Below, in pieces: positions 34,791-38,827 of a DNA stretch of 64,000 nt (position 1 is its first letter; each line of letters opens with the position of its first letter). The stretch spans positions 762,731-826,730 of the forward strand of contig BCKQ01000006.1 of NCBI GenBank assembly GCA_001600695.1. Reading direction: 5' to 3'. Source of the stretch: Ascoidea asiatica JCM 7603. Taxonomy: Eukaryota > Fungi > Ascomycota. The notes below the pieces were generated by a model that was not told where the DNA came from, ran no database searches, and was given only the letters and a program-made list of their open reading frames with translations. Both the position numbers and the translations under genes were made by a program.

Positions 34791-37700
34791 TCAGTAACCA
34801 AATTTCGTTCGCAATGAAGAAATTTTTCCTTCGATTTCGTCTATCGGCCTATCCATTTCTTGAGATATTATTGTTTTCAGCTTTTCTGACAAATTTACAA
34901 AACACTCACAAAGATCACCATCTATTATATGCTTGATTGGACTATAATAACTTCGAAATTTTAAATGATTTCTTTCAGTCAAGAAAAAAAAATGCATCCT
35001 CATTTTCTCTGTTAGTTCTTGAAAAAATTCTATGTCTGATTTTAAAGTTAATGGAGCTAATGCACCTACTGATCCCTCTAAACATGTATATATTATGGAT
35101 TCATTCAATCCTGTCAAATCTAAAGATTTCTTATCAAAAGAAACCGGTATATCTTCAATGAAAGTATTACAAATTGATTCCAATCTATAGGGAGTACCAC
35201 TCAAAAATGAATCTTGGTTAATTAAGTAATTTCCATGAGTATCTTCATCCGATAATTTTGAAATATCCTTAGGGCATCTTAAAGCCCAGATATTTCCAAA
35301 TTTATCCCCTCCTATCACAGTATCATAATCAAGAACTGTAAAACTTGTGGTATGCCTTTTTACAATATCTTGAGCAAAAGGAATGAATATATTTTCCTTT
35401 TCTTTGAATACCACAAAAATGATTGATTCTTTAATATCTGCAACATATATTCTATATGCTTGTGCTGTAACTTTCAAAATTTTAGAACATCCTAGAATAA
35501 CTTCAGCCTTTCTTAGTAATTGTTTTTGACCTATATCATACAATCGTAGAACATTGTCAATTCCAACTAGTAATTTTCCAGAAAACTCAGACAATGCAAT
35601 GGGACCCCCAGAAATACTAGTTCTATGAAGTAATTTTAATTTTTGATTTTCGGTTATTTCAAAAGTTCGAAGAAAAAAAGAATTAGTATTTTCCTCCACT
35701 TGACAAGTTCCAACAACTATAAAAGTCTTATTTTTAGATTTAAAAAAACATGAACAAATACTGATAGGGTATTCCTTACTTGAAAATTCTAAGTGCTGAA
35801 GCATTTCATGAGAATTCATATCAAACGATTGAATACAAGATGAATATTTTCCTTTTTCTTTAGGATAGCCAAATTGTTCAATTCCTTCTTCCTCTTCGAT
35901 TTCCTCAAATTCTTTCAAAGTTTCTGCTTCATTTGCATCAGTTGGCAAAATAAAATTTCTGGAAGATACTACATCTTTATCATGCTCTATTATATAAAAA
36001 ACTGATTTGTTTTCTTTTGAATATGCTAATCTCCTTGGTGTGTAGCTTAAAGTTATACTATCTACATTAAATTCATCTGTTAATCTTTCTATAGTAAAAA
36101 TCATCAAATTATTTTTGTACACACCAACAATACCATTTTCTGAACATTCTTCACTGGTAAAGTTAGACCCATGATCCAAATTGAATTTATAATCTATAGG
36201 TATTAATTTAAAATTATTATCCAACATAAAACCAATATATGTTTTGAAGGACATCGCTAGAATACAATCCGTTTCATCAATTCTTACTTTACATAATTTT
36301 ACAGGTTTTGGTCCTAGATATCTAATTGTAGTTTCGGATAATTGACCAGCTATAGGATCAAGAACAGTTTTAACATAAACTCCATTTTCCATACCAACAT
36401 GAACATAAAGTATATCACGTTTAAAACCAACAGAATTGGTTGAAGTTTGCATTGGCATTATTACTAAACTTGAAGCATTACTACTTAAGGCTTGAATAGA
36501 TAAAAGTTCTAATGTATTTGAAGGGTCAACTGATAAAACTCTTATTGTTTGATCATTACAACCCACGGCTAGAAAAGGTGATCTCAATTTACCTTCAGGA
36601 ATATCACCTAAAGATAAAGAAGTTATTTGTCCTGGCATTTCTTTTCTTTCAGTATATTCTATTAATTGTTCATCATCATCAATTTCAAAATATACAAGAT
36701 CCCTATTAGATAATCCAATTGCAACTTGGTAATTTGTGGAAGATGCTGATGTAATTTTAATTCCTGCAGGAGGAAACCACTCTACTATTTTAGGATCTTC
36801 TTCATTATTTTTATTATCGGAATATGAAAGATGCTTTATACCATCAGTATGAATTTGAATTAAAGAATTTAGACCTAATTGTTGAACAGCTATAGTTGGA
36901 GAATCTGTCACAAACCCAGAATTTGAAACTTCTTCAACATTTTCACCAATTGTTAAAACCAAAGTGGATTCCAAAAATGATATTATTAAATATTTATCAA
37001 ACTGATCTCTGGAAGATAATTTTGTAGTCCATACAGATATTGCATTTTGTGGAAGTTCAGAAGCAACAAGTTCATTAGCTGTCAAAGAATTTTCTAGAAT
37101 TTTTAAAGATGATCTAGAATTTGTACCACATAAAGAATAAATTTTTGGTAATTCTGTTAAAGAAGATGTTTGAGAAATGAATTTTGAACCAAGTATTGGA
37201 TTTAAAGAGTTTAAAACATCTACAAGTGATAAATTATCTAAAGATTTTGGATTAAATGATATTGAATCAAAATCATCTATTTCTTCACTTGTATTATAAT
37301 AATCTGTTGAACTAATAACTTTTTCATTATCTTCATCACCAAGTTTTTCAAATTGAAAAAATAATTTATCTGAATTTTCTGAATCAACAAACAAAAATCC
37401 AGATTTAAATATTAAAAGTGAAGTTGCAATTGGAACAGTATCAAAATATTTAATTTCCATTAATTTTACATTAAAATCTTCATTAGAAAATTTTATTGTT
37501 AATTTAAATAAATCTCCATAATTTGATTGTAAGAGAAAAAAAAAATCATGTTTCATTTTATGACATACACCAGATATTATATAATAATCATTATTAAAAT
37601 TTTGAGTTTTTCTTCTTGGAATTGGAACTGTTAAAATATTTTTTATTTTTTGAGAATGAAAATGTCTAAATTGAATGAAATTTTTACAACCTATTATTAC

Positions 37701-38594
37701 ACCACCTGGACCATCATTTCCACCTGGAACACTGAGTAAAAAATTAGAAGAATAATCGATTAATTGAGTTGATTTTTTTATTATATGATTTAAACCAAGA
37801 TCAAATTCATAAAAAGTTAATTGCTTTTTATTATTAGTATTATTATCTGTTGAACCGTAATCAAATTCAATAGCTGCAAATAAAGGGTTATCATAACCGA
37901 CATCTAAACCAACTAATTTAAAAGTTAAAACTTTAGAACGATTTGCTTCTAATGGTGAAGATATAACTAATTTATTATTTGAAGAATCTCTATTAATAAC
38001 ATAAAGTAAATTATTTTTTTCTATAGAAGAAAGCATGATTGCTCTACCTTTCGAATCTGAATCTAACATAAAACCTGGAGATAATCTTCTAATACCAGTT
38101 TTAGAAAATGGTTCATTAAATAAAGGTACGAATTTCTTTTGGGAAGATGAATCTAGTTCTAATATTGAAAAATTTCCAGAATCTGAAGTTAGAGCTAAGT
38201 AATCTTTTGAAGAGTTATTTACAATTCTAAAGGATATTATTGATCTAATTATACTAAAAACATTTTGTTGAAATAATCTAATTAATTTTCCAGTTGTTTG
38301 ATCAGGTCTAAAAAATTCTAAAAAAGTTGAATTTGCAATAACAATTTCTTGAACTTTTTTACCAGAAAATTGACCAATAACAGATTTTATTGAAGCTGAT
38401 GGTTTTTGTAAAGTTAAATTATATAAAACCAATAAATTTTTCGAGTTATTTTGAATTTGATTATCATTTTCATCTTGATTATCACTATCATTATCATCAA
38501 TTTCAGATTTATTTACTAGCTTTTTATTTTCAAACTTATCATTGTTATTATTATTTTCTAATTTATAGTTAGCGCCACCATAATTTGTTGACAT
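34791..38594 (-). CDS. RSE1: U2 snRNP SF3b subunit (SF3B3/SAP130 beta-propeller protein)
   Basis: LYNLTLQKPS, LALTSDSG, FSKTGIRRLSPG, ISSPLEAN, YEFDLGLNH, GGDKFGN, FRSYYSPIKHIIDGDLCE. Confidence 0.96.
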   Translation of the reverse strand: MSTNYGGANYKLENNNNNDKFENKKLVNKSEIDDNDSDNQDENDNQIQNNSKNLLVLYNLTLQKPSASIKSVIGQFSGKKVQEIVIANSTFLEFFRPDQTTGKLIRLFQQNVFSIIRSIISFRIVNNSSKDYLALTSDSGNFSILELDSSSQKKFVPLFNEPFSKTGIRRLSPGFMLDSDSKGRAIMLSSIEKNNLLYVINRDSSNNKLVISSPLEANRSKVLTFKLVGLDVGYDNPLFAAIEFDYGSTDNNTNNKKQLTFYEFDLGLNHIIKKSTQLIDYSSNFLLSVPGGNDGPGGVIIGCKNFIQFRHFHSQKIKNILTVPIPRRKTQNFNNDYYIISGVCHKMKHDFFFLLQSNYGDLFKLTIKFSNEDFNVKLMEIKYFDTVPIATSLLIFKSGFLFVDSENSDKLFFQFEKLGDEDNEKVISSTDYYNTSEEIDDFDSISFNPKSLDNLSLVDVLNSLNPILGSKFISQTSSLTELPKIYSLCGTNSRSSLKILENSLTANELVASELPQNAISVWTTKLSSRDQFDKYLIISFLESTLVLTIGENVEEVSNSGFVTDSPTIAVQQLGLNSLIQIHTDGIKHLSYSDNKNNEEDPKIVEWFPPAGIKITSASSTNYQVAIGLSNRDLVYFEIDDDEQLIEYTERKEMPGQITSLSLGDIPEGKLRSPFLAVGCNDQTIRVLSVDPSNTLELLSIQALSSNASSLVIMPMQTSTNSVGFKRDILYVHVGMENGVYVKTVLDPIAGQLSETTIRYLGPKPVKLCKVRIDETDCILAMSFKTYIGFMLDNNFKLIPIDYKFNLDHGSNFTSEECSENGIVGVYKNNLMIFTIERLTDEFNVDSITLSYTPRRLAYSKENKSVFYIIEHDKDVVSSRNFILPTDANEAETLKEFEEIEEEEGIEQFGYPKEKGKYSSCIQSFDMNSHEMLQHLEFSSKEYPISICSCFFKSKNKTFIVVGTCQVEENTNSFFLRTFEITENQKLKLLHRTSISGGPIALSEFSGKLLVGIDNVLRLYDIGQKQLLRKAEVILGCSKILKVTAQAYRIYVADIKESIIFVVFKEKENIFIPFAQDIVKRHTTSFTVLDYDTVIGGDKFGNIWALRCPKDISKLSDEDTHGNYLINQDSFLSGTPYRLESICNTFIEDIPVSFDKKSLDLTGLNESIIYTCLEGSVGALAPLTLKSDIEFFQELTEKMRMHFFFLTERNHLKFRSYYSPIKHIIDGDLCECFVNLSEKLKTIISQEMDRPIDEIEGKISSLRTKFGY

Positions 38595-38646
38595 TGCTTG
38601 AAATAAAATTCAATACAAATTTTTTTTAAGATGAAATAGTACTTAC
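38558..38646 (-). other. Putative 89-nt spliceosomal intron overlapping the RSE1 start codon
   Basis: Minus strand: AAG/GTAAGTA donor at 38646, branch CGCTAAC at 38574-38568, TAG acceptor ending at 38558. Confidence 0.5.
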
Positions 38647-38827
38647 CTTTGAGATGAAAGTGAAATATCAAACAAAAAAGGGATCAAAAGAAATTATATA
38701 TCTATTTATTTATCTTTTTATTCATTTGATTACTTTTATAATTTCAATAAATGAAAGATATTTTAGAACGAAAAGATAAAAGATAAAATAAATAAATAAA
38801 TAAAAATAAAAGTAGAAAATGGAGGGC

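What the first reader, a model, noticed from the sequence alone, without database searches (positions are those of the whole stretch)
38558..38646. Start-codon-deleting intron in the spliceosome gene RSE1: candidate splicing-based negative-feedback loop
Seen: on the minus strand a donor with 9 nt of perfect U1 complementarity (AG/GTAAGTA, intron starting at 38646) lies 52 nt upstream of the RSE1 ATG (38594). A branch-like CGCTAAC (38574-38568) and a TAG acceptor (38560-38558) lie inside codons 7-13. The branch is spelled by GGC-GCT-AAC, and C-ending codons are rare in this AT-saturated 5' coding DNA, which hints at selection at the nucleotide level. Splicing removes the ATG. The upstream exon has no in-frame ATG (in-frame TGA at 38686; only a TTG at 38671). 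The next ATG is out of frame and terminates within about 9 codons, and the next in-frame Met is near residue 186. Knowledge: Rse1/SF3B3 is part of SF3b, which engages the branch site, and unproductive splicing or spliceosome-mediated decay is known for some yeast mRNAs (e.g. BDF2). Inference: only the unspliced mRNA (or one using the weak AAG acceptor at 38597, which keeps the ATG) makes Rse1. High U2/SF3b activity would then lower its own subunit.
Basis: partly seen in the sequence, partly recalled or inferred. Interest (0 to 1): 0.85.

Follow-up and report, generated by a model that had tools for sequence, protein, structure and literature searches.

The report
Candidate start-codon-removing intron in RSE1
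A complete set of yeast splicing signals straddles the start codon of the spliceosome gene RSE1, and its donor and branch-like site recur in the only sequenced sister species, so it may be a second example of the known PRP5-type "splice your own start codon away" control, but no RNA data could be obtained to show that it is spliced.

Summary
On the minus strand, AG|GTAAGTA (donor G at 38646) lies 52 nt upstream of the RSE1 ATG (38594). CGCTAAC (38574-38568) and TAG (38560-38558) lie in codons 7-13. Splicing would remove 89 nt including the ATG, and no acceptor choice gives a productive mRNA.

Taken alone, the trio is weak evidence. About one start-codon-spanning trio per genome is expected by chance, and GCTAAC branches are not enriched after GTAAGT.

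The closest relative, Ascoidea rubescens (66% identical Rse1, same neighbouring gene), adds support:
- It has GTAAGTA 24 nt upstream of its ATG. That heptamer occurs once in 23.8 kb.
- It has CGATAAC at the same codon offset.
- Both Ascoidea proteins carry an N-terminal extension that houses these signals.
- Six more distant yeasts have none of these features.

My conservative joint chance estimate for the A. rubescens match is about 6e-4.

The mechanism is not new in kind. PRP5 has a conserved start-codon-removing feedback intron. No RNA run was listed, so the TSS, splicing itself and any feedback remain untested.

Verdict: a plausible new member of a known kind (about 0.45), with chance or neutral cryptic splicing as the main rivals. 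The scan had not noted this before on other DNA.

The parts
38640..38648 (-). Donor-like site AG|GTAAGTA (intron would start at 38646), 52 nt upstream of the ATG
   Evidence: It is the only AGGTAAGTA in 528 kb of strand sampled. It is the only GTAAGT within 150 nt upstream of any of 74 ORFs of at least 200 aa.
38558..38646 (-). Candidate 89-nt intron spanning the 5' leader and codons 1-13 of RSE1
   Evidence: The length and the branch-to-acceptor distance (11 nt) lie within the range of real introns in this genome (lengths 91-573 nt, distances 6-43 nt).
38592..38594 (-). RSE1 start codon, inside the candidate intron
   Evidence: The 54 codons downstream stay open in 22% GC DNA (chance about 0.2%), so the unspliced form is the coding one.
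38568..38574 (-). Branch-like CGCTAAC (branch A at 38569), spelled by the rare codons GGC and AAC
   Evidence: A. rubescens has CGATAAC at nearly the same offset from its ATG (+17 versus +20).
38558..38560 (-). TAG acceptor, 11 nt after the branch A
38516..38542 (-). First AUG of the hypothetical spliced mRNA: out of frame, 8 codons then TAG
   Evidence: Read. Frames were computed.
34791..38594 (-). RSE1/SF3B3 ORF, 1267 aa, uninterrupted
   Evidence: It is 66% identical to A. rubescens RSE1.
38702..38725 (-). 7-codon uORF upstream of the donor. It sets a likely upper limit for the leader if uAUGs are avoided. A. rubescens has a 7-codon uORF in the same relative place.
   Evidence: The functional meaning is inferred only.
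38693..38740 (-). TATA-like elements (TATAAAAG at 38740-38733, TATATAAT at 38700-38693), 47-94 nt upstream of the donor
   Evidence: The TSS position is an inference from the general yeast TATA-to-TSS spacing and was not measured.

Best explanation
The RSE1 leader carries a real but deliberately weak spliceosomal intron: a strong GTAAGTA donor, a sub-consensus CGCTAAC branch, and a TAG acceptor. Its 3' half lies inside the first 13 codons. The unspliced mRNA is the productive one and encodes Rse1 with an Ascoidea-specific N-terminal extension. Splicing removes the AUG and leaves an mRNA whose first AUG opens an 8-codon ORF, so no Rse1 is made and the RNA is probably unstable. This is the architecture already described for PRP5. 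What is shown: the signals, their geometry, the unproductive outcome, and the recurrence of the donor and branch-like site in A. rubescens. What is inferred: that transcription starts upstream of 38648, that the intron is spliced, and that it is maintained by selection. The further step, that the splicing rate reports U2/SF3b activity and so closes a negative feedback loop on Rse1, is more speculative (about 0.2).
For: (1) The trio is complete, with local-norm spacing. In the 264-kb sample, 8 of 11 such trios are bona fide introns. (2) A. rubescens RSE1 is syntenic (divergent class II aaRS upstream). It has AA|GTAAGTA at L001:2977-2983, 24 nt upstream of its ATG. That is the only GTAAGTA in 23.8 kb on both strands, and P(any GTA[AT]GT in a 100-nt leader) is about 2%. 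The intergenic DNA is otherwise unalignable. (3) A. rubescens has CGATAAC at ATG+17 versus CGCTAAC at ATG+20. The two codon changes, Gly to Ser and Ala to Asp, are both non-synonymous, and all three third positions are kept, including two rare C's. P(at most 1 mismatch within 60 nt) is 2.9%. The conservative joint chance is about 6e-4. (4) In both species every acceptor option removes the ATG, and no upstream in-frame ATG exists. (5) Six other yeasts have no consensus donor within 120 nt of the ATG and have short N-termini of 5-9 aa before the LYNLTLQ motif. The Ascoidea proteins have 55 and 24 aa there. (6) Precedent: the PRP5 start-codon-removing feedback intron, conserved across Saccharomycotina (PMC7491326; PMC6726248).
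Against: There is no RNA evidence of any kind: no RNA run was listed and no transcript contigs were found. The TSS is unknown, and a leader shorter than about 55 nt would exclude the donor in this genome. About one such start-spanning trio per genome is expected by chance, and this one was picked from a genome-wide scan. GCTAAC is not enriched downstream of GTAAGT genome-wide (17 and 27 hits versus 21 and 29 for the reversed pattern). 7 of 9 real introns in the sample use TACTAAC. In A. rubescens the branch-like site carries C to A at a U2-pairing position, and the nearest acceptors are poor (GAG, AAG), with TAG 45 nt away. The donor sits at a different distance from the ATG (-24 versus -52). 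Part of the branch-like similarity may simply reflect coding homology just after the ATG (alignment p about 0.03). Only one relative is available.
Confidence: 0.45

Rival explanations
1. Chance match with no biological activity. The three motifs arose by drift in AT-rich DNA, the donor is outside or at the very edge of the transcript, and the A. rubescens GTAAGTA and CGATAAC are coincidences.
For: The Markov expectation is 1.8 +/- 1.2 trios per 264 kb, which scales to about one start-spanning trio per genome. The exact extended pattern occurs 2 times in the genome versus 6 for the reversed pattern. There is no GCTAAC enrichment. The acceptor is not conserved and the leaders are unalignable. 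The finding came from a scan with thousands of notes.
Against: The independent test in A. rubescens gives about 2% for the donor and about 3% for the branch-like site, about 6e-4 jointly on conservative definitions. 0 of 6 other yeasts show a leader donor. The branch is spelled with codons used at 1% and 4%.
Confidence: 0.27
2. A protointron, meaning cryptic splicing. The leader is transcribed and a small fraction is spliced because the signals happen to be good enough, but this is neutral noise with no regulatory role.
For: [quoted passage not shown] The branch here is sub-consensus, as is typical of such events.
Against: Protointrons are typically not conserved between species (PMC6726248). 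Here the donor heptamer and the branch-like site recur in a species whose Rse1 is only 66% identical and whose intergenic DNA does not align.
Confidence: 0.13
3. The conserved GTAAGTA and CGNTAAC act in some other way. Possibilities include a promoter or leader protein-binding site, U1 binding without splicing, first-step-only spliceosome-mediated decay as for BDF2, or relics of an ancestral 5' intron whose 3' part was exonised into the N-terminal extension.
For: The donor is conserved but the acceptor is not. The N-terminal extension is lineage-specific and of low complexity. BDF2-type decay needs no 3' splice site (PMC3792478; PMC6726248).
Against: No known yeast factor motif was matched. 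A decaying relic should not survive this divergence in both lineages. There is no Rfam match on either strand, including U1 on the opposite strand.
Confidence: 0.15

Closest known systems
PRP5 start-codon-removing intron (negative feedback; Karaduman et al. 2017 as cited in PMC7491326 and PMC6726248)
   Same: The intron spans the 5' leader and the first codons. Splicing deletes the AUG and gives a non-productive mRNA, so the unspliced RNA is the coding form. The gene encodes a factor acting at U2/branch-site recognition. Splicing has to be inefficient for the gene to work.
   Different: The gene is different: RSE1/SF3B3, a scaffold subunit of SF3b, rather than an ATPase. The arrangement was seen only in the genus Ascoidea and not in 6 other Saccharomycotina, whereas the PRP5 intron is reported as conserved back to Aspergillus. 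No RNA or genetic evidence exists here. The weak element here is the branch site, paired with a perfect donor.
Protointrons of Saccharomyces (Talkish et al. 2019, PMC6726248)
   Same: The location is 5'UTR-into-coding, the AUG is removed, and the branch is sub-consensus.
   Different: Protointrons are species-specific. Here the donor and branch-like site recur in a deeply diverged congener.
Spliceosome-mediated decay of BDF2 (Volanakis et al. 2013, PMC3792478)
   Same: The spliceosome acts on an mRNA whose coding form is the uncut one, lowering expression.
   Different: For BDF2 the first catalytic step is enough and the regulator is its paralogue Bdf1. Here a full intron with a usable acceptor is present, and the proposed regulator is the spliceosome itself.
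Autoregulatory unproductive splicing of metazoan and plant splicing factors (e.g. PMC9262138)
   Same: A splicing factor is proposed to limit its own level by directing a non-productive splice of its own pre-mRNA.
   Different: Those cases use poison exons or alternative sites coupled to EJC-dependent NMD, and mostly involve sequence-specific RNA-binding regulators. Here a core U2 snRNP subunit and simple loss of the AUG are involved.

Membership tests
Spliceosomal intron of the local (Ascoidea) type | 5' splice site GTAAGT, GTATGT or GTACGT | tested here: met
   GTAAGTA at 38646-38640. Real introns in the 200-kb sample use the same hexamers.
Spliceosomal intron of the local (Ascoidea) type | Branch site TACTAAC or a tolerated variant | tested here: inconclusive
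   CGCTAAC keeps the CTAAC core but differs at positions 1-2. The real introns have TACTAAC in 7 of 9, CACTAAC in 1 and AGCTAAC in 1. There is no genome-wide enrichment of GCTAAC after GTAAGT.
Spliceosomal intron of the local (Ascoidea) type | YAG acceptor 6-45 nt after the branch, and an intron length in the local range | tested here: met
   TAG lies 11 nt after the branch A and the length is 89 nt. Real introns have 6-43 nt and 91-573 nt, and donor-to-branch spacings of 20-80 nt are common.
Spliceosomal intron of the local (Ascoidea) type | Exon-exon junction or lariat seen in RNA | not testable with these tools
   No RNA run was listed. No transcript contigs were found.
PRP5-type start-codon-removing regulatory intron | The intron spans the leader and CDS and removes the AUG, and the spliced RNA has no productive ORF | tested here: met
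   Frame analysis of all acceptors in both species finds no upstream in-frame ATG. The first AUG after the junction opens an 8-codon ORF.
PRP5-type start-codon-removing regulatory intron | Conservation of the arrangement in related species | tested here: inconclusive
   The A. rubescens donor is exact and its branch-like site matches 6 of 7 at the same offset, but the acceptor is not conserved. Only one congener is available. The arrangement is absent in 6 more distant yeasts.
PRP5-type start-codon-removing regulatory intron | Inefficient splicing that responds to the activity of the encoded factor | not testable with these tools
   This needs RNA-seq or RT-PCR under altered Rse1/U2 dosage.
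Protointron (Talkish et al. 2019) | Splicing signals not conserved in related species | tested here: not met
   The donor heptamer and the branch-like heptamer recur in A. rubescens, with joint chance about 6e-4.
Protointron (Talkish et al. 2019) | Low-efficiency splicing detectable in RNA-seq | not testable with these tools
   No RNA data.

The most novel reading that the evidence does not exclude
Ascoidea evolved a second homeostatic loop of the PRP5 kind. A perfect donor in the RSE1 leader is paired with a deliberately weak branch site written into rare codons of a lineage-specific N-terminal extension. The probability of deleting the RSE1 start codon would then rise with U2 snRNP/SF3b branch-site activity. 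On this reading the N-terminal extension of Rse1 exists mainly to house the 3' half of the sensor intron.
Probability: 0.2. Interest if true: 0.7.

Novelty: new member of a known kind. Interest (0 to 1): 0.55.

Why it matters
If the intron is real, it would be the second documented case in budding yeasts of a core branch-site-recognition factor that controls its own level by splicing away its start codon. It would also be the first for an SF3b subunit. That would suggest this control has been invented more than once, and it would give a natural reporter of U2/SF3b activity with a strong donor and a weak branch. It would also show how a regulatory intron can shape a protein's N-terminus. If it is not real, it is a useful calibration: in a 23% GC genome a perfect-looking trio around a start codon is expected about once per genome.

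Tried and rejected
(1) RNA evidence. The look-up of sequencing runs listed no RNA run, so read laying could not be used. Exact-protein look-ups for transcript contigs of this gene and of the A. rubescens ORF found nothing.

(2) A productive upstream exon. This is rejected for every acceptor in both species, because there is no in-frame ATG.

(3) A 50-nt leader intron ending at AAG 38597. It has no CTAAC, TTAAC or CTAAT in it and is shorter than any real intron in the sample.

(4) A U1 snRNA gene on the opposite strand, since TACTTACC is the complement of the donor. There is no Rfam match at E up to 10, and the intergenic space in A. rubescens is too small.

(5) General alignment of the two intergenic regions. 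It is not better than shuffles.

(6) The built-in reversed-pattern control of the genome search. It is not neutral for these words (203 versus 97 for GTAAGT...ACTAAC), so I used k-mer rates and Markov simulation instead.

(7) More genome sampling.

(8) An Rfam U1 search of the genome. It failed twice, so the canonical U1 5' end is assumed from general knowledge. Two ATACTTACCT sites exist in the genome.

Only junction codons and frames were computed.

Full report
WHAT IS THERE

On the minus strand the sequence reads ...CTCAAAG|GTAAGTAC..., with the donor G at 38646. The RSE1 ATG is at 38594-38592. Codons 7-9 (GGC GCT AAC) spell CGCTAAC at 38574-38568. TAG is at 38560-38558.

The ORF 34791-38594 is 1267 aa and carries all three RSE1/DDB1/CPSF1 domains. 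Its best match is Ascoidea rubescens RSE1 at 66% identity; the next best matches are at 50% or less.

The window is 23% GC. The genome is 20.3 Mb in 71 contigs.

CONSEQUENCE OF SPLICING

The candidate intron is 89 nt and includes the ATG.
- For this acceptor and every other AG within about 200 nt downstream of the donor, the upstream exon has no in-frame ATG.
- The first AUG after the junction (38542) is out of frame and stops after 8 codons.
- The next in-frame Met is residue 176, inside the first beta-propeller.
- The 54 codons after the ATG are open in very AT-rich DNA (chance about 0.2%). The unspliced RNA is therefore the coding form.
- I did not build or search any joined spliced sequence. 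Only frames and junction codons were computed.

WHAT REAL INTRONS LOOK LIKE IN THIS GENOME

In that sample, about 9 introns fit productive gene models, most with short first exons.
- Donors: GTAAGT, GTATGT or GTACGT.
- Branch sites: TACTAAC in 7, CACTAAC in 1, AGCTAAC in 1.
- Branch-to-acceptor distance: 6-43 nt.
- Length: 91-573 nt.

Whole-genome pattern lists show many short GTAAGT...TACTAAC introns. The candidate fits in donor, length and acceptor distance, but its branch site is sub-consensus.

IS THE TRIO BEYOND CHANCE?

- GTA[AT]GT + CTAAC (25-150 nt) + YAG occurs 11 times in 264 kb on both strands, and about 8 of these are productive introns. A 3rd-order Markov model predicts 1.8 +/- 1.2.
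- Scaled to start codons, about one start-spanning chance trio is expected per genome.
- The extended pattern AGGTAAGTA-N40-70-CTAAC-N5-30-YAG occurs twice in the genome, against 6 for the reversed control.
- GTAAGT followed by GCTAAC is not enriched: 17 and 27 hits versus 21 and 29 for the control.
- The reversed control is not neutral for these words, because the ACTAAC version gives 97 forward against 203 reversed. I therefore rely mainly on the k-mer rates and the simulation.
- Of 74 ORFs of at least 200 aa, only RSE1 has GTAAGT within 150 nt upstream of its ATG.

On this genome alone, chance cannot be excluded.

THE INDEPENDENT TEST: A. RUBESCENS

The A. rubescens locus is syntenic, with a divergent class II aminoacyl-tRNA synthetase upstream. 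The intergenic DNA does not align. Even so:
- **Donor.** GTAAGTA stands at L001:2977-2983, 24 nt before the ATG. It is the only GTAAGTA in 23.8 kb on both strands. Any GTA[AT]GT has about a 2% chance of falling in a 100-nt leader.
- **Branch-like site.** Codons 6-8 (AGC GAT AAC) spell CGATAAC at ATG+17, against CGCTAAC at ATG+20 here. The two differences are non-synonymous (Gly to Ser, Ala to Asp). All three third positions are kept, including two C's that are rare in both genomes. A heptamer within one mismatch of CGCTAAC has a 2.9% chance of falling in the first 60 nt.
- **Outcome.** Every acceptor option again removes the ATG, with no upstream in-frame ATG.
- **Distribution.** Six other Saccharomycotina have no consensus donor within 120 nt of the ATG, and their N-termini run only 5-9 aa before the conserved LYNLTLQ. 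These are Saccharomycopsis, Pachysolen, Kuraishia, Wickerhamomyces and two unnamed species. The two Ascoidea proteins have 55 and 24 extra residues, which is exactly where the branch and acceptor sit.

The conservative joint chance of donor plus branch-like site is about 6e-4. Four caveats apply:
- The start of the CDS aligns weakly anyway (p about 0.03), so part of the branch similarity may be descent.
- The A. rubescens variant weakens U2 pairing.
- Its nearest AGs are GAG and AAG, with TAG 45 nt downstream.
- Only one congener exists in the databases.

COMPARISON WITH WHAT IS KNOWN

The proposed logic is already documented for PRP5. Splicing of its first intron removes the start codon, is inefficient, responds to Prp5 activity, and is conserved across Saccharomycotina and in Aspergillus (PMC7491326, citing Karaduman et al. 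2017; also PMC6726248).

In S. cerevisiae, 16% of protointrons also remove the AUG, but these are not conserved (PMC6726248). BDF2 illustrates first-step-only spliceosome-mediated decay (PMC3792478). A literature search found no report of such an intron in RSE1/SF3B3.

ALTERNATIVES EXAMINED

- A U1 snRNA gene on the opposite strand: no Rfam match.
- A 50-nt intron ending at AAG 38597: no branch motif.
- A productive upstream exon: excluded.

WHAT COULD NOT BE DONE

- No RNA run was listed, so the TSS, junctions and lariats are unknown.
- TATA-like elements at 38740 and 38700 and a uORF at 38725-38702 suggest a leader of up to about 100-125 nt that could include the donor. This is inference only.
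- PRP5 of this genome could not be read as a positive control.

VERDICT

The kind of mechanism is known. My probabilities:
- Evolutionarily maintained start-codon-removing intron: about 0.45. The specific SF3b-sensing feedback is about 0.2.
- Chance: about 0.27.
- Neutral cryptic splicing: about 0.13.
- Another role for the conserved motifs: about 0.15.

Noticed in passing
window 38430-38594 (-); L001:3001-3072: Rse1 of both Ascoidea species has a low-complexity N-terminal extension before the conserved LYNLTLQ motif (55 aa here, 24 aa in A. rubescens). Six other Saccharomycotina have only 5-9 residues there.
   Followed up: partly
L001:5053 onward (A. rubescens RSE1): The public A. rubescens protein (1221 aa) lacks 46 residues relative to the uninterrupted 1267-aa ORF. 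The gene model appears to have removed in-frame Ser-rich and Gly/Asn-rich low-complexity stretches as introns, which is probably an annotation artefact.
   Followed up: partly
window 38702-38725 (-); L001:2926-2949: Both species have a 7-codon uORF upstream of the leader donor (55 nt upstream here, 28 nt in A. rubescens). This could be coincidence in AT-rich DNA.
   Followed up: no
window 38652-38659 and 38629-38636 (-): The octamer TTTCATCT occurs twice, once just before the donor and once 23 nt downstream, the second followed by a decayed GTATTG. It may be a small local duplication of the donor region.
   Followed up: no
whole window versus G000:C1:100001-300000: The 64-kb window has no TACTAAC on either strand and no convincing productive intron. 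The 200-kb C1 sample has about 9 introns (1 per 22 kb), which would mean several hundred introns genome-wide, a high number for a budding yeast.
   Followed up: partly
L028:6207-7168 (A. rubescens RPL16): This ribosomal-protein intron of about 960 nt uses the branch variant TACTAAT, 16 nt before its TAG. A. rubescens therefore tolerates a non-C final branch-site position.
   Followed up: no
window ORFs (16 genes): Codon usage is extreme. C-ending codons make up 2.8% of all codons, GGC is 1% of Gly codons and AAC is 4% of Asn codons.
   Followed up: no
L002:2471-2488: In an unnamed yeast (47% identical Rse1, assembly GCA_000960405.1), GTAAGTA followed by GTAAGC lies about 200 nt upstream of the RSE1 ATG, with an AATTAAC...CAG about 130 nt further on. 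This could be an ordinary 5'UTR intron.
   Followed up: no
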